Shown one piece after another: positions 1 through 59,150 of a DNA stretch of 64,000 bases. Position numbers and translations under genes: made by a program. The stretch covers positions 61,008,001-61,072,000 of the forward strand of contig CM060731.1 in assembly GCA_030704615.1 (NCBI GenBank). The letters are read 5' to 3'. The stretch's first letter is position 1, and each line of letters opens with the position of its first letter. Source of the stretch: Takakia lepidozioides (lineage: Eukaryota; Plantae; Bryophyta). The notes below the pieces were generated by a model. The model was not told the origin of the DNA, ran no database searches, and saw only the letters and a program-made list of their open reading frames with translations.

Positions 1-1687
1 GATGCAACCAACCTCTTATGAGGAAACCCTACGTCAACCACTATTCCTCAACACCAACAACCCCACCCCTGCTCAGAGAGGCCTGGCTAGAAAATGGTCT
101 TCCTGGGACTTCAAAGGAATTAGGAGGGTGGCTGATATATGGAAGGACAACACCTTTGTTTCCAAAGACCACATTTCTTCCATTCTAGGGAAAATCAAAG
201 CCAACAATTCCTACGATTGCTTGATTCAGGAGACTTCAAGCCAGTGGCTGTCCAATCTCCAAGCAGGGCCCAGTGTTCCTACCACCAATTTCTGGACTCT
301 AGGCATTATACAATCAAACATAACCATCCTCTTTGTCACCAAATCCAATCCTCTTCACTACAAGGGATTTCCCTTTTTGGTCAACACTGACACTTTGAGG
401 CTCAACCTTCAAAGCAGCTACCCCATCACATTTGCCCGATTCACACACACACCCATCAGGATTTGTTGGTGGTCTTTCCCTTTACGGGAAATGGACCCCC
501 TCCCACCCCTCAACATTCCCCTGACCTCCTGGCTTGCTTCCGAGACCTTCGTATGGATATTAGGCAGGCCACTGGCGGACCTGGAGTTCGATCCAAAAGA
601 GTGGGAATGGTCATTCGCCCGCTCCAAATCTCCATTCTTGGAATATACAACCAAAAAAGCCTACAGGCCGGCACTATCAAACCCACAGCCTCTGCAATCC
701 AAATGGAATGATCGGTGGAGCCACTTCAACTTTACAAACGAAAACTGGAATTCCATATGGGCCACTATCTGGAACAAAACGAGACCGGCGAAGATTGCTG
801 CCTTCCTGTGGCAGATAGCAAACAGGGTGTTGAAAGTCAGAGAGTGGCTGGGGTGCAATGAAGCCCTCTTGTGCAGATGTTGCTCATCGGCTGTTATGGA
901 AACCCTCGAGCATTGCCTGCTGCATTGCCAAGCACCTGCTATTCTCTGGCCCATAGTAAAGAGTTTCTACAGACCCTGGAATCAATGCTCTATATCCCAA
1001 ATTCACATTCTTCTAAACTATGACCAGAGCACTACCCTGCCCGGTATTTGACAATCTTCGGAGCTCAACACTCTGGCACATTTGGAAAGCAAGATGCAAT
1101 AGAACTTACTCTGCTAAAATATCTGCCCTGCTCACCAACGTTTACCAGGACCTTCAAATTGAGGCTAGAAGGGCTTGGAAAAAACTGTGTGCAGATGTTG
1201 AAAGAGCGCCACGATAGGCAGGTGCGCTCCACAGTACCTTTACCTCGACATGGGGGAGGGATGGCATCCTATGCTACAGCTCCAGCCCAGACAGCTGCCT
1301 ATGGAATGTCCTGCCCCCGACTGCCTGGAGGGACATCCGCGGCACCGTCCACAGCATCGCCGGAGTTCGATAAAGACATAAATTGGAAGCATATCAAGCA
1401 GTCATCAAAAGTCTCAAAGCTCAGCTTTCGCTGACCACTGGGCTACTTGGTAAGTCCGCAGAAAGCGACTCACAACTGCACCCCACGTTCTTAACGGATT
1501 TGGAGGATCTTCTCAATAAGTGTAACTGATCTTTTTGCATAAGTTTGGTTTTAAGGCCGTGGGCCTTGGTAGATCGTATCATACTCGGAATGAGTGTCAA
1601 GTTCCCCCCTTCACTGACGACGGTGTGTGTGCCTTATGGTGTAATCGAGGGTTTTAATTTTTTCCCCTCTAATAATTAAAAAATAAA
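1..1687 (+). mobile_element. L1-clade LINE, 3' part (ORF2 C-terminal region, zf-RVT, 3' UTR, A-rich tail); degenerate
   Basis: ORF 2-1051 ends in zf-RVT motifs (W..IW...RPAKIAAFLWQ...CRCC...ETLEHCLLHC). It frameshifts into 1020-1373 (LWHIWKARCNR..., one internal TAG), followed by TCCCCTCT and an A-rich tail at ~1672-1687. Confidence 0.88.
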
Positions 1688-1712
1688 GCTTCAGGTCTCT
1701 GTCCCTGTTCTT

Positions 1713-1738
1713 TATATATATATATATATATATATATA
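1713..1738. repeat. (TA)n microsatellite
   Basis: Uninterrupted TA run lying between two tail-to-tail LINEs. Confidence 0.95.
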
Positions 1739-1826
1739 TGACAGGATCCGGATGGTGTTGGACCGGTATCATAAACATTTCATACTATCATCGGTGAAGA
1801 GGTGGCTCCTTCATACCATATACTGG

Positions 1827-2617
1827 TTTTCTTTTTTCTTTTTTTAAGAGGGACATTGGCCTCAAAACTTTACAGTCTGAGAGCTACATAGGGGAAGTAA
1901 GGAAAAAATAACCTTACAGAAGGCCATGAAGGATGATAAACGAGGCACTGCTCATGTAACGGTTGCCAGAGAGATGAAGGAAGCAAGAAAGGTAGAAGGT
2001 GGTAAGCAAATCGAGCAGAGAGAGTATAGAGGTAGAACAAGGTATGAGGGGAGGCAATGAGGAACTACATGCAACAAGGTAGAGATGAGCTACATGTTTC
2101 CCCTTTTGCATTTAGGCTGATCGAACGTTAACTGGGCTTTGGATTACCCTCTCTTTAAGCTACGTCGGTGACGCAAATTGACTTCCGGCTCCTCACCATC
2201 GTCTCCTCACCATCCAGAGGAGATAGTCTGTTACTGATTGAACTTCCAACATGCAGGAATGGGGTCGTTCCATTCAATTCTCTTGTCTGAATGCCTCCTA
2301 CAGAGGATTCCCCCTTTCCCCCAAGTATTGTCAAAACAAGTGAGCAGTTGGGTGCCTCTCATGCCACCGCATCCGTGTAAAGCTGCAGAGAGTTAACGCC
2401 AAGCTTTCCTAGCCTCAGACATTAAGTCTGAATGAACCCTAAAAAGAACGTTCTTCAAGCAAGGCCTAAAATTATCAAAAAGAAAAGAGCATCTACTCTT
2501 CCAAATATGCCAAAGAATAAGTTCTCTAAGAGATTCCCACACCGAGCATGATTGCCATATGGCCCCATTATGAATATTAAGAATATGGGCCCACCCCCGA
2601 AATGGGGCATTAGCCAT
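1827..2617 (-). mobile_element. 5'-truncated L1-clade LINE 3' end
   Basis: Minus ORF 2393-2617 (VWESLRELILWHIWKSRC...EARKAW) is homologous to the C-terminus of the LINEs at 1 and 23176. T-tract at 1827-1845 is the poly(A) tail, preceded on the minus strand by TCCCCTCTT. Confidence 0.82.
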
Positions 2618-2655
2618 GAGGCGAAGTGGCTCTTAGTTACGTCGGCTTCGGCTGG

Positions 2656-2657
<2 letters not shown>

Positions 2658-2708
<51 letters not shown>
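2658..2708. repeat. (TC)n microsatellite
   Basis: About 25 uninterrupted TC units. Confidence 0.95.
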
Positions 2709-2709
<1 letters not shown>

Positions 2710-2710
2710 A

Positions 2711-2890
2711 AGACAACCATCATGTAGCCCAGTGGTAATGGGCACATACCACATTGGATGTGGTTGTGGGTTCAAACCACCGTTTGGTGTGTCATGAAAG
2801 TGTCCACCTTCCTGCTGGAAGGCAATAGCCCTTCGGGGTCAAGTGACACCATAAGTTACGCTCTCTTCGGGAGGCATCATACTTTCTTTC
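2711..2890 (+). mobile_element. tRNA-derived SINE or tRNA pseudogene head (3' boundary uncertain)
   Basis: Pol III A box TAGCCCAGTGG (2725-2735) with a D-stem GCCC/GGGC. B box GGTTCAAACC (2769-2778) in a GTGG/CCAC T-arm. No clean anticodon or acceptor stem. Confidence 0.6.
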
Positions 2891-4393
2891 TCTAAATATT
2901 GACAAGCAAAGTAGGGATGGAGATGTCATGGTTTTAGTCATGGTTATCTAGAATTACCTACTTCTAGTTAACTAGGATATTTTAGATATTTATATTTATA
3001 TTTTGTGTGTTGGGACTTCATCGGGTCTCACATGCCAAGTGAGGTGTCGAGCCTCACTTGGGACATGAGGATAGGTTTTCCCCCTGTGAGGATGGAGGAG
3101 GCTCATCTTCTTGTAGTTGAGCCTCCATGAGCCTCTCCCACCTCCATAGCTCTAGGTATTGAGAGAGAGTATGGTGAGGGCTTTATAGGGTAGCAAAGGT
3201 GCCCTTGGCTTGATTTAGTTTATGTGATTGAGTGGATTCATGAGTGGAGTGTTTCCATTGTGTGTTCTCTTCCATTATCACTACAAGAAGATCACTTTAT
3301 GCTTGTGAGTGCGGAGTGTAAGGATTAGTTTTGCACTTGTATGTTAAAGAGATTGAGAGCTAGGAGAATTTAGCTCTTGTATCACAAGGCTTGCAAGGGG
3401 ATGCAAGGAAAGGTGCTCGAGTGTTGCATGCACCAAGGAGTTGGAGAGCTTCAGAAGAAAGCTCTTGAGTCACAAGATTTTGCAAGGATTGCAAAGAGGA
3501 AGTCTTGTGTGTGTGGAAGCATGGATTCTAGGGTTTGAGAATCATTTGTATGCATTATGGAGTCAATGGTGTGCGCCATGGCTTGTGGAGAGTGACTAAA
3601 GGCTTGTTAGTGCTCATTTCACTATCAAGCTAGGGTTAAGCAAGTTCAAAGTGTGGATGTTGTGGAGAAGAAGCCAAGGAGCTACATAGGCTTAGGCTTG
3701 AAGACAACATTGAAAGTAACCAGTTGGAGAGCATCAAGAAGCTCAAGATGACTCCAAAGGGAAGCATGTGGGTGAGAATTTTATCTATGATGATGTGAAA
3801 CCAAGCCTAGAGTATTACAGAGCTTGGAGCACATGTGGGAGATCGTTGGAGGTGGTCTTCATGAAGAAATGAGATTGTGGCTCACAGCGTGCATAACAAC
3901 TTCAACCATACATTAGCATGTGACAAGACAAGGAAGGGGAAGGTGAAGCTCATGTATTTATTCCCTTTTTGCTTAAGTTTTGTGGTGGATGGTTGATCAA
4001 GCAAGTGATGCTTATGTAGAGCATGCTCTTTAGGGCTTCTGACTTCAAGTTTGAGAAGATGAGCTCTTGAATAGAGGTGTGGATACACATTATGATGAAT
4101 GAAAACAACACCTAGGTCAAGAGGTGGAAGTGTGTGTGACTAGCCCATGCAAAGGAAAGCACATGGAAGATGACATACAAAATTCAAATTCAAGCAAGGC
4201 TTGACGCTTGTCATTGGGCACATTAGCTTGCTATGAGTTCCAAGGAGATCAAGAGGAACTCGTCAATTTGGGATGAATGCATTGCAAAGTAAGATAATGC
4301 AATCTTGCATGCATATTAGGGGGGAAAATACCATGAAAAAGGTGTTTCTTACTATACTCTACAAACCCTAGTCTCCATACTCTTCAAGAAACT

Positions 4394-17854: not shown

Positions 17855-20800
17855 ATGAGTTCCCCTCGCCCATGCGGAGGACTTCCAATTAATCACCCCT
17901 GTAGACAGAACAACCGGGATGACAGGTTGTGGGAAAGAGAAGTGGCACGTGCCCGAGCCCTTGGGCTTTCAAGGATGCCATGCCCATGTGAACGTTGTTT
18001 GGGCACTACAAGTAGATCTGAGGACGGTGTGCGCACACATCTCCTTCACCACAAAAGACATGAAGCATTTCGGGTGTGGATTGGAGATGGACCTGCAGAC
18101 GAAGACGATGAGGAGTGGGCACAATTGGACAATGCACACCCCTGAGGGAGCCATACAGGAGGACTATGTCATGGGCGCAGGACAGGAACCAGGCATGGAC
18201 GGAGGGGTGGAGATTACTCGAATGTTGCAGGAAGCATTCCACATCATGGACGATGCTGAAGAGGGGGACGGCGCTGCGACAACTGGGGATGGTGATGACG
18301 CAGGAAATGAAGGCATTCACGTGGGGGAAGGCGTGGAAGGAGGTGGAGATGGAAATGAGAATTCTGCACACATGACACTAGAAGAAGCATGTGTGCCACT
18401 GTACGAGGGATGCAAATCCACAAAGCTTGCTGCCAGCATGCTGTTGATGAACCTGTGCACAACCCACGGTGTGTCAGACCATTTTGTGGACGAGTTGTTC
18501 TCTTTGCTTCGGCTGAACTTGCTTCCACAACCAAATGAAATGCCAAAAAGCTGTCACATGGCCAACAAAATGATTGGGAAGCTCGGCCTCAACTACGTGA
18601 AAATACATGCATGTCCAAAAGGACATGTACTTTTCAGAAGAGAGTACAAGGACGCTATGGAGTGCCCCAAATGCGGTGCAGCCCGATACCATGATGTGGG
18701 CAGGTTACAACAGCCAGCCAAGGTGTTGAGGCACTTTCCCTTATCCCCCGTCTATTACGAATGTACAAATGCAAGACCATTAGTGAGCTCATGACTTGGC
18801 ATTCCAGGAATGCCTCAAACGATGGTTTGGTAAGGCATGTCCCAGATTCCCTTGCATGGAAGCATATAGATGCAACTTGGCCCAATTTCGCCGAGGACCC
18901 ACGCAATGTGCAATTGGCTGTATCTACGGATGGAGTAAACCCATACGGATCAAAGAGTTGCACATGGTCCACATGGCCCGTGCAGTTGGTGGCATACAAC
19001 CTGCCACCATGGTTGACAACAAAGAAATTCTTTGTCATGTTGTCTCTCTGATTCCAGGCAAGGAGTCCGTGACAAATGCAAACATAGATGTGTATTTGCA
19101 ACCATTGATTGAAGAGCTACAAGAACTATGGATTGGAGTTGAAGCTTACGACATTTTGAAACCAGTAGGGCAACGGAGTTTCACCCTCCATGCCATCCAC
19201 GATTTCCCCGCATATGGCCTTGTTGCGGGTTGCAAGACGAAGGGCTACAAAGGGTGCCCCATTTGTGGGCCCTATGTGGATTCACGGCACTCAAAGCCAT
19301 TAGGGAAGACAATATACATGGGGCATCGACGTTACCTTGCAAGAAACCACCCCTACCGACGAGCAGGCCGACACTTCAATGGATGTGTTGAAAAGAGAAT
19401 GGCACCAAATGCTGTGACACCGGAGGAGACATTGCAATTTGCAAAGGAGAAAGAGGCGTTCATGGAGATTGGAGGGAGAGAAGGAAGTAGTGCGGATCCA
19501 GCCATGTCGCACGGGGTGAAGCGCCGGACAATCCTTTGGGATTTGCCATACTGGAAGGTGCATGAATCCCCCCCCCCCCATTCACTCACTTTCTTTCACA
19601 TTGTGCTTCCTGGAATTACCTTTACTGTCAGGAGTCCTTCCACCAACTCCTAAGTCAGTGTAACTACTATGCAGTAGATGTTGAAGTCGTACACCTCACT
19701 GTGTAGAGGATCGTGCAGTTGTTGAAAGCAGAATGTAGTAACATGGACAACTTCTGCCACATATTCTACTATTTTTGCCCATAGAACTTGGTCTCATGGG
19801 AGGACATTTGGCATTTCAGAACCTCTTGCAGCGGTACCTCCTGGACCCCATGCATTGTGAGAAGAACTTCTGCGAGAACATTCTGAAGACTATCTTTGGG
19901 GAGAAGGATACGATAAACGTACGAAAGGACATGGAGATTGAAGGGATACGGTCACATCTGTGGCTAAGGCCTGATCCAAATAGACCAGGCAAAGTGCTCA
20001 TGCCAGCAGCATCATACGTCCTGACCAAATCAGAGCAAGAGGAATTTTTGAAGACATTGGGAGCCATGAAAGTGCCAACTGGATTCTCGGGTGCTTTCCA
20101 AAAGCATGCCATAAACAAGAAATGGTCGGGGATGAAGTCACATGATCTACACGTGATGATGCAGCAGATTTTGCCAGTGTGCATTCGGGGTACGATGGCG
20201 TCGGGTCCTCGCACAGCCATAATGCGTGTAAGTCGAGTGTTTAGGAAGATTTGTGCGAAGGTGTGGGATCCGAGGGACATTACATCGCTGCATGAGGATG
20301 TGGCTGTGACCCTATGTTTGCTGGAGAAAGAATTCCCTCCATCATTCTTTGACGTCATGACGCACTTGCTAGTGCATCTTGTAGAGGAGCTGCATAGCCA
20401 GCCGTTGGATGTACCCCATGGAGAGGTACATGAAGGATCTGAAGGGGTATGTACGCAACATGGCACGGCCAGAGGGGAGTATGGCGGAGGGCTACATCCG
20501 CGACGAAGCCCTGGGCTTCATGACAGAGTATATGTCTTTATTTGATGCAATACAACGACGGGTGTGGGACGAGAACGAGGAAGAAGGAGTTGTAGGCGAG
20601 GTCCTAGAAGGTGGTGGAACAAAGCGTGCCATGAGCCCGCGCCTTCGGGATGTGGCACATGATTATGTGCTGAACAACACAACAACCATGACACCATGGA
20701 GACAGTGGGTGTAAACTTTACATCCCTCCTGTGCTATTCTTAATGGTCTTTGTATGCATGAATTACATATATATTGTCACAAGTCATTCCGGCCACTATG

Positions 20801-21636
20801 GGAGTGGGATCGTGTACTAACAGGGTGCTTCAGACGACAACAGAGGGTGTTTCGTAGTTGGTGTTGTTGCTTGCAAGTGATCATGAAGTAGGCTGCATCA
20901 CTACACTGTGCTTGAAAGGACACACTCTACATGTGGCATGCATGTACAGTACGGTGTTGGTCAGGGGGACTGAGTTGCAGCTTCTATTTGGTTTCTGCCA
21001 GAAAATACGCAGCGGAGAAGGAACGGAGAGCATTTGCAAAAGCCTCCTGGTGACTTATGACAGCGGAGTGGCATCATTTTTTGAACAAGAGAGTAAGAGC
21101 TGTGCACGAGATCGGAATCCAATTTCATGCCATGTGCAATATGTAGGAGTGATCAAAGAGATCCTTAAACTAGACTATGGTCTTGTGAAGCCAATTCTAT
21201 TCCGTTGTTCTTGGGTAAAAGCCAATATGGTAGGAGAGAATGCCACCATGAAACGGGATGAGTACGGGTTCCTCCTTGCTGATTTCAGAAAAATGCTACC
21301 ACAAGATGAAGAGCCATTCATCTTCCCATCGCAAGTTGAGCAAGTTTTCTTTTCAGATGACATCCATGCGCCGGGATGGAAGGTGGTTTTCACAAGGACC
21401 CCCGGGCCAAACGAGTCGTTGCCGACGTCCATGATCTGGACCTAGGGGAGAATGCCGACCACGAGGGTCTGAGGGAACCATGAAATCTACCAGATACGGC
21501 CGAACCAGTCTCTTTGGAAGGAGCAGTTACCTTTAATGAGGAAGACATTCCAGGGTTGGTAATTACCGCCAGGCAAATTGCAGATGTGGGTAGTGAAGGG
21601 GAAGATTATTTGGATACGGATAGTGAGCCCAGCTGA
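17855..21636 (+). pseudogene. CACTA TnpD-type transposase (Transpos_assoc, Transposase_21, DUF4218, DUF4216), frameshifted
   Basis: CPCERC...HLL; IHACPKGHVLF...CPKC; DGLVRH.PDSLAWKHID...RNVQLAVSTDGVNPY...WPV...YNLPPW; DVYLQPLIEEL...HDFPA...GYKGCPIC...HRRYL; DPMHCEKN...MKSHDLHV...FPPSFFDVMTHLLVHL...MYPMERYM; EPFIFPSQVEQVFF. Intron at ~19558-19820. Confidence 0.92.
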
Positions 21637-23175: not shown

Positions 23176-26100
23176 TAATTATCGTCCAATCACCCTTTTG
23201 AATGTCTCCTATAAAATTATTGCGAAGACCCTTTCCCGGCGGCTTCAAATTCTTTTACCATGTCTCATTGGACCTGCTCAGTCTGGCTTCGTTAGGAAAA
23301 GAATGATTCTAGATAATATCATTCTTGCTAATGAAGCCTTGGCTTTTGTTGCGCATACTAATCAGCTGCTGGCTTTGCTTCTTCTCGATTTTGAGAAGGC
23401 TTTTGACAGAATAGATTGGAACTTTCTCCTTATGGCCATTCAGCGTTCTGGTATTCACTCTCAATTTCTGGCCTGGGTTAAAATCTTGCTGTTTTCAGCC
23501 TCTAGTCATGTCATGACCAATGGGTTGCTCTCTAAAGCCTTTCCTTTACAACGGTTGGTCCGTCAAGGTTGTCCTCTCTCACCCTTCTTATTTCTGATCG
23601 TTGCTTATTGCTTGGGACACCTTATGGACTCCCAGCAACATATCTGTGGTCTGCAGATACCCATCCCTAACTCCCCTTCTCCTTTCAATCTTACGCTCTC
23701 TATGTACGCAGATGACACCGTTTTCTATCTTCGAAATGACAACCTTCTCATGATTGAGGCTTTCTTTAACACCCTTGAGTGGTTTTGTTTAGCTGCAGGA
23801 TTCAAAATCAACTGGTCTAAATCAGTTGGCATTCTGTCTTTACTTACGGATCAATCTGCTGCTCACCTACCTTTGTGGGTGGAGGATAAGGGTCTCTGTT
23901 GGTTACCAGAAGGTGACTCCTGCAAACTTTTGGGCCATCTCATTGGGCATAATCTCTCTCAACAGACGCGTTTTGCCCCTATCCTTTGCTCCCTCAAGGC
24001 CAAGCTTTCTTATTGGTCTTCTGCCAGACTATCCATTGCAGGTAAGTGCATAATCAAATGAGACTCAAATCCATTAAAGCCTTGACCCGTAATTTTCTTT
24101 GGGGTGCTCTGGATACAACAACCTCCAAGCGGGCTCTGATTTCCTGGTCTCAACTATGTCTAAAGAAAAACGGAGGAGGGTTTGGTATTCTAGATCTGGG
24201 AAAAGAGATTGATGCGCTTCTTGTAAAATGGATCCCCCGTTTATTTATGTCTTCCGCTGGTCCCTGGAAATTTTTGCTTTGGAATAACATGCGTAGTTCA
24301 GTTCCTTCCTCCAACCCTGCTTGGAGGCCTAGTTTGCGATGGTTGTTCCAGGGAGGATCCAGGAATCGTAAACAAATGGGGGGCAGTGGGGCCTGGCATG
24401 CTATATGGCATGCTTGGATATGCCTGTGAGAATATCTGTACCAGAAACCTCCCAATTCCTGGGATGAAGCAGTCCGTCAACCCATCTTCGGGAATTTACA
24501 ACTAGACAACGAGGAGTTGGCCTCTTGTATTGCTAAATGGGCCATATGGGAGCGTGCCGGGATCTCCCTTGTAAGTGATGTGTGGACAGGTTAGGACTTG
24601 CTTCCTCGAGACAGTTGGGCAGGTAAATTACATCCATTAACTCTTAACCGGGGATGGCTGATAATTTCGGATGCAGTTAACTTGAGATGGTCCCCTCTTC
24701 TCTCCTCTAGTCGGGAACAATGGCTTCCCCCGGCTTGGCGGGGTTGTTTGGGGGGGCAACCCAACGAGCATTATTTATGTCACGGTAGTTCTTAACAGAG
24801 TTGCGGCCAGCGGTATTGGTTACACTGCCAACTCGGATGGTTCCCTTGTGTCTCTGGGTTTAATTTCATGTCTTGCTGGTTCCACCTTTGCTGTTAGGAT
24901 CATTGACTCTCAGGGTGTTTCCAACCCGAATTAGCTAGTACTCTGCTCCAATGGGGACAAGCGATTTCTGTGTTCTGGTTTCTTATGCTCCCAATATCTC
25001 AGCTCCAATGTGATCCCGGGGAGTGGGTTTGGTGTATTCAGGATACCACTAAACCATTTTTTGCTTACTCGGCAAAAATAGGTTACAAGATGCAATGCAA
25101 CGCCTTCTCCATCTCTGCTAGACTTTCAGCCAAATGGGAGCCAATGGTTGTCTCTGTAAGGGCTTGGAAATTTATTTGGAAGGATGTTTGGTTGAAGCAG
25201 AGGTCTGCTAAGACCTCGGCCTTCCTGTGGAAACTTTGCAACATGATTCTACCTCTTTCCTTCTCCCAACCTGCTCGGCCTAACGAAGTGTGCAGGTCAT
25301 GTTCTTTGGGGCAAAGTGAATCCTTTCTTCATTGCTTCTTGAACTGCCCCTTTGCGGCGACCATTTGGTCCAAGGTTCATAGCTTGTACAGGAACTGGCG
25401 AGATTTTGATTACAGGGATCCTCTTATTATGTTGCTCAATATCTCTGCTAATGTTCCCTGGCAATCTTGTCAGGTTTGGAATACTCTAAGAGGTCTGGGG
25501 CTCTAGCATATCTGGAAGGCACGTTGTGCTTTGACATTTGATAGCAAGCCTGTTAATGTTAAAACTACTATGGCCAATCTTTTCATTGACTTACTGGTAG
25601 AAGGTCACAAAATGTGGGGGGTCCTGTTGGGCACAATATGCAGATGCTCTAAGGAGCAGGAGGTTGTCCTTCTCTCCAAATTTGACGCCGAATGGGGGCT
25701 GTTTGGATTACTTTGCAAACAAGAAGGAGAGCGAGTGTGCTGGTCATCCCGACCTCCAGTCAACTGGTGACTCCCCCAATCACTGGGCCTCACCGGCGGA
25801 AGTTAAAGAACGGGACATCAATTGGCGTCATAGGAAGAATAGAGGCTCAAAGATCCGTGCTCATTTGAACTTTGAGCCCCTCAGAGTCGAACGTTGAGTA
25901 GGATTTGGTGCTTTGGCTTCTGGCTCGGCAGTAGGTTCCTGCAATTGTTTGGTGCTTTTCTACTTCCTTTTTCTGTTGCATGGTAGCCCTGCCAGTGTGA
26001 TAGATTTTTTGACAAATGCAATGCACCTCTTATTTTGGTTAAATCTTAGGCTCTTCTCTGTTCCTAGTGCTCAATCTAGCAGTGCTTGGGTTTTATCATT

Positions 26101-57619: not shown

Positions 57620-59150
57620 CCAAATTAACGTAGACCTTCTACCACTTGCCCACGAAGTCTTGCCAAACTAATGCTCACCTGAAGCAGCTCATCTGTTAAT
57701 GTCCATGTCTTTATCTGCCAGCGAGGACCATCACTTAGGATAAGCCTCAATAATATGGTGGTCGTTTATCCCAGAAGACTGAGTGATCAGAGGTGCGGGT
57801 GGAGACAATTCCTTCCCTAGCCCATGAGGCATCGAATTTTGCAAGATTGACGTGCCATTTTGTGCAAAGAGCATTTGCATACTGAATCCAAAATTAACCC
57901 CAGACCTTTCGGCCTTTTGTTAGAAACTCAATAAAGACCCTACACATTGTAGCAAGAAGATTTGGTTGTATGTTTCCATACAATTGAGAGCATCAATATT
58001 TTCAGATGTGTCAAAGTGCTGGGACTGAAGCTCCGGCCAAAGAGCGAGCCAAGCTCCCCAAATTGCCTTCTAGGACTTTGAGCCAACAATCACAAATCTA
58101 TTCCTAGATCCACTTCGTGTCGTGAGATGTTGGGTGAAGTCCCATAACGAGCGCAACCCTCGTTTTGTGTTGCTAAGATATGTGCCTTGGATCAAAGTGT
58201 TAATTATTGACCACTTGAGACTGATGAAGACTACGCCGCTAGAAAAAGGTACCACAACGCCTGTGGTTTCAATATCCTTAATCCTAGAAGACGCTTGGAG
58301 AAGGAGCAAGCTTGCCTTCGCTGCATTGTCCAGCACAGTGAAGCAAGAGAAAGATTTTGTATGATTAAGTATTTCCATTGTCCTACAAAAGGCTGAATTA
58401 AAGAATGGGGGATCCATACACCAATCAATGCTTTAACTTGAGTTTCAATATCTAAGATACCAAGTCCACCTTGCTTTTTGCTAAGGCAAAGTTGTGACAC
58501 AAGAAGCCAAAGTCCTTCGAGAAGAGTACGCAATATTTGGTGGTCCCCAAAATCAAGAAGTTGCAAACAATCGCCTTGACATACTTAAGAACCTAGAGTC
58601 CAGACAAAAGCAAAGAACCACAAAGATGAAGACAAGATCTGAATCTTAGTAATCAAGGCTCTACAATTGAGAGACATGTAGACCCCCAATATGACAACTT
58701 TGCTCTAGACAACACAGGGAAAACCTGGAGAGTTGAGAAAGATTAAGACCAATGTTGTGCCCCATCAAAGTGTACGACTTCCCATGGGCAAGCCACCGAA
58801 GTCCCCAGTGCAGGCCCCACAACGGCACGTGAGCCATTCTTAGGGGTGAGATCCGGAGAAAATACCAGATTGAACTCAGAGGCATAATATATATGATGTC
58901 TCTTGAAAGAAGCATAAATTATGGTGTCTCTTGACTCGAAGGGCTATTTCCTGCCTGGACAGTGACACCAATCAGTGGTTGATTGAACCCACAACCGGGC
59001 ACTTCCGAGGTGGTATGTGCCTATTACCACCGAGCTACAACTTGGTTGTCCAGAGGCAATACAAAAGGTGTCAAGAGTTGCAAAACACATGGCAATCTTA
59101 TCTGCACGTTGGTTATTAAGGTAAATGTTGGTGTCATCTGCATACATCTA
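57620..59150 (-). mobile_element. Highly degenerate L1-clade LINE with an internal deletion
   Basis: MYADDTNIYL at 59147; LMGHNIGLNLSQ; KKQGGLGILDI...WIP; C-terminal FDASW...WDKRPPYY. The zf-RVT region is missing. Confidence 0.78.

What the first reader, a model, noticed from the sequence alone, without database searches (positions are those of the whole stretch)
1301..1434. Hidden +1-frame micro-ORF (D-I-N-W-[KR]-H) conserved just past ORF2 in all four divergent L1 elements
Seen: each LINE's ORF2 ends in a W-x-x-x-P-P-x-x-W-like motif and then loses similarity in frame 0, yet a motif reappears in the +1 frame. L1#1: GAC ATA AAT TGG AAG CAT (1375-1392; ASPEFDKDINWKHIK). L1#3: GAC ATC AAT TGG CGT CAT (25814-25831; WASPAEVKERDINWRHRK). 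L1#2, minus: GAA GTC AAT TTG CGT CAC (2185-2168; SPLDGEEPEVNLRHRR). L1#4, minus: GAC ATT AAC (57703-57695; WSSLADKDMDINR*). Distance from the last W codon to the D/E codon is 49, 49, 49 and 46 nt, always 3n+1. Two adjustments are needed: for L1#2 an obvious 14-bp tandem duplication at 2189-2214 is removed, and for L1#4 the terminal W is read from a TGA. Differences are mostly synonymous or conservative (ATA/ATC/ATT, AAT/AAC, CAT/CAC, K/R, D/E), and the matching antisense frame has a stop in L1#3. No ATG is shared. Inference: this L1 lineage encodes an unrecognised acidic-then-basic C-terminal extension reached by +1 recoding or non-AUG initiation. Alternatively it is a position-fixed 3' UTR RNA recognition element. 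I know of no description of this.
Basis: partly seen in the sequence, partly recalled or inferred. Interest (0 to 1): 0.82.

Follow-up and report, generated by a model that had tools for sequence, protein, structure and literature searches.

The report
Out-of-frame coding tail after L1 ORF2
Four old, very different L1-type jumping genes in this plant window, plus relatives in public data, carry a short peptide-coding stretch just past the end of the reverse-transcriptase gene; it sits one base out of frame yet has evolved like real protein, so the ribosome probably shifts frame to make it, which I found described for no LINE.

Summary

Within the window alone the match is only modestly better than chance (p about 0.005-0.015). 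The decisive evidence comes from a public contig, L001, whose ORF2 is 46% identical to L1#1.
- It has the same +1 offset.
- After the last W, the +1 frame has pN/pS 0.32 (18 synonymous and 20 non-synonymous changes, p = 7e-6). The ORF2 frame (1.5) and all other frames look neutral.
- Before the W, the ORF2 frame carries the signal (0.55) and the +1 frame does not (1.16).

Near-identical paralogous contigs of the same organism show no indel between W and motif. They differ little up to the +1 stop and 3-5 times more after it. No RNA structure, splice joint, shared start codon or RNase H match was found.

Best reading: a 35-43-residue tail (Ser/Pro-rich, acidic, then D-[IV]-[NS]-[WFL]-[KR]-H-[IVR]-[KR]). 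It is most likely added to ORF2p by a +1 ribosomal frameshift at the W codon, which is followed by UGA, AGG or AAG. That the stretch is coding is well supported. The mechanism is inferred.

This scan already noted the same feature on other DNA of this genome.

The parts
2..1328 (+). L1#1 ORF2 remnant running off the window start. The zf-RVT domain lies at about 716-949. There is a copy-specific frame break near 1030-1050 and a copy-specific TAG at 1215-1217. The remnant ends with ...WGRDGILC...WNVLPPTAW.
   Evidence: Pfam zf-RVT, E 1.2e-7. Translations. Paralogous contigs read C at 1215 and carry 14 extra bases at 1030/1031.
1326..1332 (+). Last conserved ORF2-frame codon (TGG) plus the next four bases, TGG AGG G. 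This is the candidate +1 shift site and is identical in L001.
   Evidence: The selected frame switches here. TGGAGGG is shared with L001 2541-2547 although synonymous sites are saturated.
1327..1434 (+). L1#1 +1-frame tail of 35 codons, GGTSAAPSTASPEFDKDINWKHIKQSSKVSKLSFR, with stop TGA at 1432-1434. The core motif is at 1375-1398.
   Evidence: pN/pS 0.32 in this frame only. Paralogous contigs show four substitutions here, two synonymous, K>R and K>Q, and none listed makes a stop.
1371..1373 (+). ORF2-frame stop (TAA) of L1#1. It lies inside the conserved +1 codons GAT AAA. The 15 ORF2-frame codons between the W and this stop are not conserved.
   Evidence: In this frame L001 reads RGKQALLFRFPRV** against L1#1 RDIRGTVHSIAGVR*.
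1649..1676 (+). 3'-terminal 28-nt element of the L1#1 family, followed by an A-rich end and (TA)n. It is a separate conserved feature, not part of the tail.
   Evidence: About 25 of 28 bases (about 27 of 30 with two flanking bases) match L001 2941-2968 while the rest of the UTR is scrambled. Summed contig depth is about 40 times that of the neighbouring bins.
2144..2248 (-). L1#2: last W codon at 2248-2246 (TGG AAG T), ORF2-frame stop at 2233-2231, 14-bp tandem duplication at 2187-2214, and motif EVNLRHRRSLKRG* at 2185-2144.
2234..2632 (-). L1#2 ORF2 tail in the ORF2 frame, with one TAA at about 2395-2393.
   Evidence: tblastn against the L1#3 tail, E 1e-14. Codons shown.
23198..25767 (+). L1#3 ORF2 remnant: RVT_1 at 23198-24058, zf-RVT at 24970-25503, and a tail ending ...WSSRPPVNW.
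   Evidence: Pfam RVT_1 E 1.3e-27; zf-RVT E 8e-6, scoring just under Pfam's curated cut-off (26.8 against 27.5 bits). Translations.
25765..25771 (+). L1#3 candidate shift site, TGG TGA C. The ORF2-frame stop directly follows the W.
   Evidence: Any shift in this copy must happen at or before this stop.
25766..25897 (+). L1#3 +1-frame tail of 43 codons, GDSPNHWASPAEVKERDINWRHRKNRGSKIRAHLNFEPLRVER, with stop at 25895-25897. The core motif is at 25814-25837.
57689..57893 (-). L1#4, heavily decayed. ORF2 tail at 57893-57750, TGA at the W position (57749-57747), a +1-frame TGA at 57733-57731, then ...SSLADKDMDINR* with the motif at 57703-57695 and the stop at 57691-57689.

Best explanation
A clade of plant L1-type LINEs, probably from a non-seed plant, encodes a short protein segment of 35-43 residues in the +1 frame. 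It starts at or within a few codons of the last conserved tryptophan of ORF2 (W..PP..W). The segment runs Gly, a Ser/Pro-rich stretch, an acidic patch, D-[IV]-[NS]-[WFL]-[KR]-H-[IVR]-[KR], and then a basic end.

Shown here: this segment is under purifying selection as protein, in that frame only, and the selected frame changes from the ORF2 frame to +1 at the W.

Inferred: a fraction of ribosomes translating ORF2 shift +1 at the W codon. There the next ORF2-frame codon is a stop in weak context (UGA C in L1#3, UGA G in L1#4) or AGG/AAG (L1#1, L001, L1#2). The result would be an ORF2 protein with a basic C-terminal tail. Ribosomes that do not shift would end 0-15 unconserved codons later.

Guessed from composition only: the tail serves nuclear import or nucleic-acid binding.
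For: 1. L001, a public contig whose ORF2 is 46% identical to L1#1, has the same layout. In the +1 frame it reads NGGESKPSSSASPEFDKSDINWKHVRAPTKTKLSYFP*, against PGGTSAAPSTASPEFDKDINWKHIKQSSKVSKLSFR* in L1#1.
2. Nei-Gojobori counts after the W: the +1 frame has 18 synonymous and 20 non-synonymous changes, pS 0.78, pN 0.25, ratio 0.32, Fisher p 6.7e-6. The ORF2 frame gives 1.51, the +2 frame 1.14 and the antisense frames 0.6-2.7. In ASPEFDK.DINWKH all six differences fall on +1 third positions. Further upstream a serine switches codon family (TCC/AGC).
3. In the 26 codons before the W the pattern is reversed: ORF2 frame 0.55, +1 frame 1.16. The ORF2 body gives 0.45 over 168 codons.
4. All three indels between L1#1 and L001 are 3 nt long, also in an alignment made from nucleotides alone.
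5. Contigs of paralogous copies from the same organism, laid at 80% identity or more, show no indel between 1224 and 1451. Their changes in the tail are TTC>TTT, AAA>AGA, AAG>CAG and CGC>CGT, with no stop. Differences are about 1-2% up to the +1 stop and about 5-6% after it.
6. Across six copies the core keeps its residue classes. Minimum changes by codon position are 5, 5 and 13. Arg/Lys appear as CGT/AAG and CGC/AGG/AAG. L1#1 and L009 share only 8 of 24 bases.
7. The ORF2-frame stop wanders (0, 5, 14 and 15 codons after the W), and the ORF2-frame peptides there are unrelated.
Against: - No translation product or ribosome footprint has been seen.
- The candidate shift site is not one conserved heptamer: TGG AGG G, TGG AAG T, TGG TGA C, TAT TGA G. 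tRNA-Trp cannot re-pair in the +1 position.
- No stimulatory RNA structure was found downstream.
- All copies examined are decayed.
- The codon statistics rest mainly on one pair (L1#1 and L001), plus short cores from the other copies.
- In L008 and L009 further indels blur the frame relation.
- The runs that look like RNA are only guessed to be RNA.
Confidence: 0.6

Rival explanations
1. The tail is a separate small ORF ('ORF3') translated on its own. Initiation would be at a non-AUG codon near the W, or by re-initiation after ORF2, so no frameshift fusion to ORF2p is made.
For: The coding signal in the +1 frame is real. A gene caller predicted a 67-residue ORF from an upstream ATG in L001. 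The +1 frame is open for 37-100 codons upstream of the W in all copies.
Against: - No ATG is shared. L1#3 has none in 98 codons.
- The +1 frame upstream of the W shows no constraint (pN/pS 1.16), so any start would have to lie within a few codons of the W, where no common near-cognate codon exists.
- In L1#1 and L001 the ORF2 stop lies about 45 nt downstream of the start of the conserved tail, which does not fit termination and re-initiation.
Confidence: 0.2
2. The frame is corrected in the RNA rather than on the ribosome. A base would be left out by transcriptional slippage, editing or a tiny intron near the W, so that the mRNA carries the tail in frame.
For: L1#1 and L001 have C-runs and G-runs next to the W: CCCCC / CCCCCCC and GGG / GGGG.
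Against: - These runs are not shared by L1#2, L1#3 or L1#4.
- Contigs of two runs guessed to be RNA cover 1118-1695 with no gap and no joint near 1326-1375.
- The tail's conservation begins within 3-4 codons of the W, which leaves no room for an intron.
Confidence: 0.05
3. The conserved stretch is a 3' UTR RNA element that the reverse transcriptase recognises (stringent-type LINE), not coding sequence.
For: Plant and green-algal L1s with conserved 3'-end elements are known (PMC3472496). In L009 the motif lies right before the A-rich tail.
Against: - There is no consensus structure (-0.32 kcal/mol).
- Single-sequence folds are no better than shuffles (z from -1.5 to +1.1).
- Conservation is at the residue level, not the base level: Ser TCC/AGC, Arg/Lys CGT/AAG, and 8 of 24 shared bases with the same residue classes.
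- In L1#1 the motif is about 300 nt from the 3' end, and a different, truly terminal element is conserved there.
Confidence: 0.07
4. The tail is a dead relic. It would once have been an in-frame ORF2 tail or the start of an RNase H domain, put out of frame by one ancient 1-nt change. The resemblance among copies would then be leftover similarity or chance.
For: W..PP..W resembles the start of the RNase H domain of other plant L1s, for example P0097 ...WEKPPPGSYKLSTDGA. Within the window alone the block is only modestly above shuffles.
Against: - Synonymous sites between L1#1 and L001 are saturated (pS 0.78-0.80) while the tail keeps pN 0.25, lower than the ORF2 body at 0.36. Neutral decay since a shared shift cannot give this.
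- Pfam finds no RVT_3 in any frame piece.
- The RNase-H-like reading of L1#1 in the ORF2 frame (LEA...ESDS) is absent from L001.
Confidence: 0.05

Closest known systems
+1 programmed ribosomal frameshifting in retroelements and cellular genes: Ty1 CUU-AGG-C, Ty3 GCG-AGU-U, antizyme UCC-UGA (my own knowledge; review PMC5009743, antizyme PMC1874602); UUU_CGN in plant amalgaviruses (abstract of PMC5052127)
   Same: Two overlapping frames that are each under selection, with a switch at a point where the next zero-frame codon is a stop (UGA) or AGG, as in antizyme and Ty1. The result is a C-terminally distinct product.
   Different: In those elements the shift joins gag to pol or makes the main product. 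Here it would add a short tail to the end of a LINE ORF2. There is no fixed heptamer and no downstream structure, and tRNA-Trp cannot slip. The review mentions frameshifting in non-LTR elements only for gag genes (HeT-A, TART), not for ORF2.
Stringent-type 3'-end recognition elements of LINEs, including a monocot L1 lineage and a green-algal L1 (Ohshima 2012, PMC3472496)
   Same: A conserved stretch downstream of ORF2 in otherwise divergent plant L1s.
   Different: Those elements lie in the last 45-50 nt, form a hairpin with compensatory changes, and are conserved as bases. This stretch starts at the ORF2 end, has no structure, and is conserved as codons. The L1#1 family does have a candidate of that kind, but elsewhere (1649-1676).
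In-frame C-terminal additions to L1 ORF2: the RNase H domain of many plant L1s (from my own knowledge; P0097 shows one), the 190-residue acidic tail in L002/P0056, and the Ulp1-type peptidase in L016/P0034
   Same: Extra sequence is attached at the same place, right after W..PP.
   Different: Those additions are in frame and unrelated in sequence (BLASTP E 0.03-0.06 to P0056). A sister lineage (P0008, P0014) simply stops at WDPD* and has about 70 nt of UTR.

Membership tests
Plant L1-clade LINE (ORF2 with RT and zf-RVT) | Reverse transcriptase domain (RVT_1) | tested here: met
   L1#3 23198-24058, E 1.3e-27. In L1#1 this region runs off the window.
Plant L1-clade LINE (ORF2 with RT and zf-RVT) | zf-RVT domain after the RT | tested here: met
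   L1#1 E 1.2e-7. L1#3 E 8e-6 but 26.8 bits, just under Pfam's curated cut-off of 27.5. Relatives P0006, P0007 and P0008 also carry it.
Plant L1-clade LINE (ORF2 with RT and zf-RVT) | APE endonuclease and ORF1 upstream | not tested
   All four copies are 5'-truncated or run off the window. The sequence upstream of L1#3 is a CACTA transposase.
Plant L1-clade LINE (ORF2 with RT and zf-RVT) | A-rich 3' end | tested here: met
   L1#1 ...AATAATTAAAAAATAAAG followed by (TA)n at about 1671-1740. L1#2 has an A-rich end near 1830-1850 on the minus strand. L009 has (AATAA)n.
+1 programmed ribosomal frameshift site | Purifying selection in the zero frame upstream and in the +1 frame downstream of one point | tested here: met
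   pN/pS of 0.55 (ORF2 frame) against 1.16 (+1) before the W, and 1.51 against 0.32 after it.
+1 programmed ribosomal frameshift site | A slow zero-frame A-site codon (stop or rare codon) at the shift point | tested here: inconclusive
   UGA follows the site in L1#3 and L1#4, AGG in L1#1 and L001, AAG in L1#2. Codon rarity in this organism was not measured.
+1 programmed ribosomal frameshift site | A conserved shift heptamer that allows P-site re-pairing, as in Ty1 or RF2 | tested here: not met
   The sites differ among lineages, and UGG to GGN gives no re-pairing. Only a Ty3- or antizyme-like shift without slippage would fit.
+1 programmed ribosomal frameshift site | A stimulatory downstream RNA structure | tested here: not met
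   RNAalifold gives -0.32 kcal/mol. z-scores run from -1.5 to +1.1. Such a structure is not obligatory for +1 sites.
+1 programmed ribosomal frameshift site | A trans-frame protein product is observed | not testable with these tools
   No proteome or ribosome-profiling data were available. The runs that look like RNA are only guessed to be RNA.
Stringent-type LINE 3'-end RNA element | Located in the terminal ~50 nt, forming a hairpin with compensatory changes | tested here: not met
   The motif is about 300 nt from the L1#1 3' end. No structure or covariation was found.
Plant L1 RNase H (RVT_3) domain | A Pfam RVT_3 match after W.PP.G | tested here: not met
   No RVT_3 hit at E up to 10 on any frame piece.

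The most novel reading that the evidence does not exclude
A whole clade of non-seed-plant L1 elements needs a +1 ribosomal frameshift at the last tryptophan codon of ORF2 to make a longer ORF2p isoform with a conserved basic tail. That tail would be required for retrotransposition, for example for nuclear entry or for holding the template's 3' end. This would be the first recoding event described inside a LINE ORF2, and a new type of +1 site (UGG followed by UGA, AGG or AAG, with no slippage and no structure).
Probability: 0.45. Interest if true: 0.85.

Novelty: new variant of a known kind. Interest (0 to 1): 0.72.

Why it matters
LINE ORF2 proteins are taken to end at the ORF2 stop. A conserved out-of-frame tail would mean that annotation of these elements misses part of the protein, and that LINEs, like LTR elements and viruses, use recoding to make two isoforms from one RNA.

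It would also add a natural plant +1 frameshift site of an unusual kind. Few are known outside viruses. The peptide motif is short and well defined, so its role can be tested directly.

In practice, the W..PP..W anchor plus the +1 motif is a ready search key for this L1 clade in bryophyte and other non-seed-plant genomes.

Tried and rejected
1. RNase H relic. W..PP..W looks like the start of the plant L1 RNase H domain, and L1#1 reads LEA...ESDS in the ORF2 frame downstream. But Pfam gives no RVT_3 match and L001 lacks that reading. Rejected.
2. Homology of the tail to the long in-frame tail of P0056/L002. BLASTP gives E 0.03-0.06 on short low-complexity matches. Not supported.
3. More copies by protein search. 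The word search gave nothing with the L1#1 ORF2 piece, only L001's own ORF with the L001 +1 ORF, and nothing with the L1#3 piece. The ESM Atlas gave no usable hit.
4. More copies in JGI metagenomes. The peptide pattern DINW[KR]H[IVR][KR] gave 80 pattern matches, none confirmed. The 3'-terminal DNA motif gave three chance hits.
5. Other L1 lineages. L003-L007 stop at WDPD* with no tail. In L010 and L012 the contig ends at the ORF2 stop. L011 has a different long +1 ORF without the motif. L016 continues in frame into a peptidase.
6. Antisense coding. The antisense frame whose wobble positions coincide is open in L1#1 but gives only pN/pS 0.6, p 0.07.
7. PAM2-, PIP-box- or APIM-like readings of the peptide, from memory only. 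The spacing does not fit and the residues are not conserved across lineages. Dropped.
8. A raw count of mismatch phase before and after the W is not significant on its own (chi-square p 0.18). The code-aware count is.
9. Literature. Four full-text searches and the large recoding review gave no LINE ORF2 3' frameshift or ORF3 of this kind.
Full report
WHAT IS THERE

The window is plant nuclear DNA, rich in transposons. It holds four decayed, 5'-truncated L1-type LINE 3' ends.
- L1#1: plus strand, ORF2 remnant 2-1328.
- L1#2: minus strand, ORF2 tail 2632-2234.
- L1#3: plus strand, RT at 23198-24058, zf-RVT at 24970-25503, tail ending at 25767.
- L1#4: minus strand, tail 57893-57750.

Pfam finds zf-RVT in L1#1. 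In L1#3 it finds RVT_1, and zf-RVT scoring just under Pfam's curated cut-off (26.8 against 27.5 bits). The four are very divergent. L1#1 and L1#3 are 24% identical over 325 residues, and the tails are 32-40% identical. In the ORF2 frame they still share zf-RVT, then ARKAW, then F..WG..GILC, then W..PP..W.

Distant relatives found by an exhaustive HMMER search show that ORF2 of this wider group normally ends a few residues after that point. Examples are ...LPWDAS*...SWDPD* and ...PPGGTFFD*. W..PP..W is therefore the ordinary end of ORF2.

THE OBSERVATION

- The motif GA[CA] [AG]T[ACT] AA[TC] starts 49, 63, 49 and 46 nt after the first base of the last W codon.
- The 63 in L1#2 becomes 49 without a 13-of-14 identical tandem duplication at 2187-2214.
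- In L1#4 the W position is a TGA.

A second block (CCG G.G ... GAT AAA GA) lies upstream of the motif. Its spacing differs among copies by 6, 6 and 3 nt, always a multiple of three.

As a four-way nucleotide block the match is only modestly above dinucleotide shuffles. None of 200 shuffles reached it with loose register and 3 of 200 with tight register. On the window alone this would be a suggestive coincidence.

THE DECISIVE EVIDENCE

The nearest relative of L1#1's ORF2 in 1.8 billion representative proteins is P0001 (46% identity). Its contig is L001, from Logan SRR327455, and it carries the same arrangement.
- ORF2 frame: ...WGRGGIICSCSGRDTCVWPRQTPPQW RGKQALLFRFPRV**
- +1 frame: GGESKPSSSASPEFDKSDINWKHVRAPTKTKLSYFP*
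- L1#1 +1 frame, for comparison: GGTSAAPSTASPEFDKDINWKHIKQSSKVSKLSFR*

Nei-Gojobori counts for L1#1 against L001:

| Region | ORF2 frame | +1 frame | +2 frame | Antisense frames |
|---|---|---|---|---|
| After the last W | pN/pS 1.51 | pN/pS 0.32 | 1.14 | 0.6-2.7 |
| 26 codons before the W | 0.55 | 1.16 | 0.98 | not computed |
| ORF2 body, 168 codons | 0.45 (pS 0.80) | not computed | not computed | not computed |

After the W, the +1 frame has 18 synonymous and 20 non-synonymous differences (pS 0.78, pN 0.25, Fisher p 6.7e-6). The selected frame therefore changes from the ORF2 frame to +1 at the W. The tail (pN 0.25) is at least as constrained as the zinc-finger region of ORF2 (pN 0.36).

Further points from the same pair:
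- In ASPEFDK.DINWKH all six differences fall on +1 third positions, and further upstream a serine has switched codon family (TCC/AGC).
- The three indels between the two copies are each 3 nt, also when the alignment is made from nucleotides alone.

SAME-GENOME PARALOGUES

Contigs of four public runs were laid on 1-3000 at 80% identity or more. One is DNA of the same organism (X1), two are of the same organism and are guessed to be RNA (X5, X6), and one is a plant metagenome (X7).
- They include close paralogues of L1#1 spanning 1118-1695.
- They show no indel between 1224 and 1451, so the +1 offset is not private to this decayed copy.
- They read C at 1215, where L1#1 has an in-frame TAG. They also carry 14 extra bases at 1030/1031, where L1#1 changes frame. 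Both defects of L1#1 are therefore copy-specific.
- Inside the tail the listed differences are TTC>TTT, AAA>AGA (K>R), AAG>CAG (K>Q) and CGC>CGT, and none makes a stop.
- Differences run at about 1-2% from 1218 to the +1 stop (1432-1434) and at about 5-6% in the next 120 nt.
- No joint (skipped segment) lies near 1326-1375.

OTHER LINEAGES

L009 and L008 (Logan SRR22405887) carry ...EFEKGDVSFRHVRY* and a frame-broken DVNF.RHVRF*, directly before an A-rich tail.

Across six copies the core reads D-[IV]-[NS]-[WFL]-[KR]-H-[IVR]-[KR].
- The minimum numbers of changes at codon positions 1, 2 and 3 are 5, 5 and 13.
- Arg/Lys are written CGT/AAG and CGC/AGG/AAG.
- L1#1 and L009 share only 8 of 24 bases yet keep the same residue classes.
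- The two other sense frames hold stops in several copies.

Bases are not conserved here while residues are, so an RNA motif cannot produce this pattern.

The feature is not universal. The P0008/P0014 lineage ends at WDPD*, followed by about 70 nt and an A-rich tail. L002 and L016 instead continue in frame into unrelated sequence.

RIVALS TESTED

- RNA element. RNAalifold gives -0.32 kcal/mol with no meaningful covariation, and single folds are no better than shuffles. Stringent-type L1 elements described in plants sit in the last 45-50 nt and form hairpins (PMC3472496). The L1#1 family has a candidate of that kind elsewhere: 1649-1676, nearly identical in L001 while the rest of the UTR is scrambled.
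- Antisense ORF. Weaker signal: pN/pS 0.6, p 0.07.
- RNase H relic. No Pfam support, and the ORF2-frame look-alike in L1#1 is not shared by L001.
- Splice or RNA-level repair. No joint was found, there is no room for an intron, and no homopolymer is shared.
- Separate small ORF. This cannot be excluded. But there is no shared start codon, and the +1 frame is unconstrained upstream of the W. In L1#1 and L001 the ORF2 stop lies about 45 nt inside the conserved tail, which argues against termination and re-initiation.

MECHANISM (INFERRED)

In L1#3 the ORF2 stop directly follows the W (TGG TGA C), so any shift must occur there or earlier. ORF2-frame conservation reaches the W, and +1 conservation starts within 3-4 codons of it.

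The sites are TGG AGG G (L1#1 and L001, identical despite saturated synonymous sites), TGG AAG T (L1#2), TGG TGA C (L1#3) and TAT TGA G (L1#4).

This resembles +1 sites that work by a slow or stop codon in the A site without P-site slippage (antizyme UCC-UGA, Ty3; my knowledge and PMC5009743, PMC1874602). It is not a member of any defined motif class. Efficiency is unknown. Ribosomes that do not shift would add 0-15 unconserved residues and stop.

The tails are basic overall (pI 9.3-10.8), with a Ser/Pro-rich start and an acidic patch. A role in nuclear import or nucleic-acid binding is a guess.

NOVELTY

Full-text searches and the main recoding review gave no case of frameshifting at the 3' end of a LINE ORF2, nor a LINE ORF3 of this kind. 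The review lists frameshifting in non-LTR elements only for gag genes.

This scan has noted the same phenomenon on other pieces of this genome: s1-493585, s1-473794, s1-479491 and s1-454665. I saw those notes only after reaching the same reading. They are AI notes, not independent evidence.

LIMITS

- All copies are decayed.
- The statistics rest mainly on one divergent pair plus short cores.
- The organisms behind the public contigs are not named by the tools.
- RNA status of two runs is a guess.

Noticed in passing
window 1649-1676 (and L001 2941-2968): A 28-nt 3'-terminal element, GGGTTTTAATTTTTTYCCCTYYAATAAT, is almost identical between L1#1 and the 46%-identical relative L001, while the rest of the 3' UTR cannot be aligned. 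Summed contig depth at 1601-1700 is about 40 times that of the neighbouring bins. This is a candidate stringent-type recognition end, or a tail shared with a SINE.
   Followed up: partly
window ~2395-2393 (L1#2) and ~57896-57894 (L1#4), minus strand: Both very divergent copies carry TAA at the same homologous ORF2 codon, two codons after the W of ARKAW. Yet the ORF2 frame stays conserved for about 45 more codons. L1#2 has no other stop in 132 codons. This is either chance (about 1%, judged after the fact) or a second recoding (readthrough) site.
   Followed up: no
window ~2587-3000: A very high-copy repeat with summed contig depth up to about 420,000, many loose ends at 2587 and 2862-2885, and a (GA)n run at 2650-2717. 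It is inserted into or abuts the L1#2 ORF2 remnant.
   Followed up: no
window 1690-1850: L1#1 and L1#2 lie tail to tail. Their A-rich ends are about 100-150 nt apart and are separated by a (TA)n run at about 1715-1740.
   Followed up: no
window 18796-21442: Pieces of a CACTA-type transposase (Transposase_21, DUF4218, DUF4216) lie directly upstream of the truncated L1#3.
   Followed up: partly
L016 2-2710 (JGI metagenome 3300064049): A single open frame joins an L1 ORF2 tail (zf-RVT, ...WLGDGIIGS...) through a Lys-rich linker to a Peptidase_C48 (Ulp1-like) domain.
   Followed up: no
L002 2501-4261 (NCBI GCA_014871385.1, CM026421.1): In this L1 the ORF2 continues in frame for about 190 acidic, Ser/Pro-rich residues after KWNSTPP. 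The added sequence is unrelated to the +1 tail.
   Followed up: partly
L011 1854-2063 (Logan SRR22405887): Another L1 lineage (P0007) has a +1-frame ORF of more than 70 codons that starts right after the ORF2 stop. It lacks the DINW motif, and the contig ends before the ORF does.
   Followed up: no
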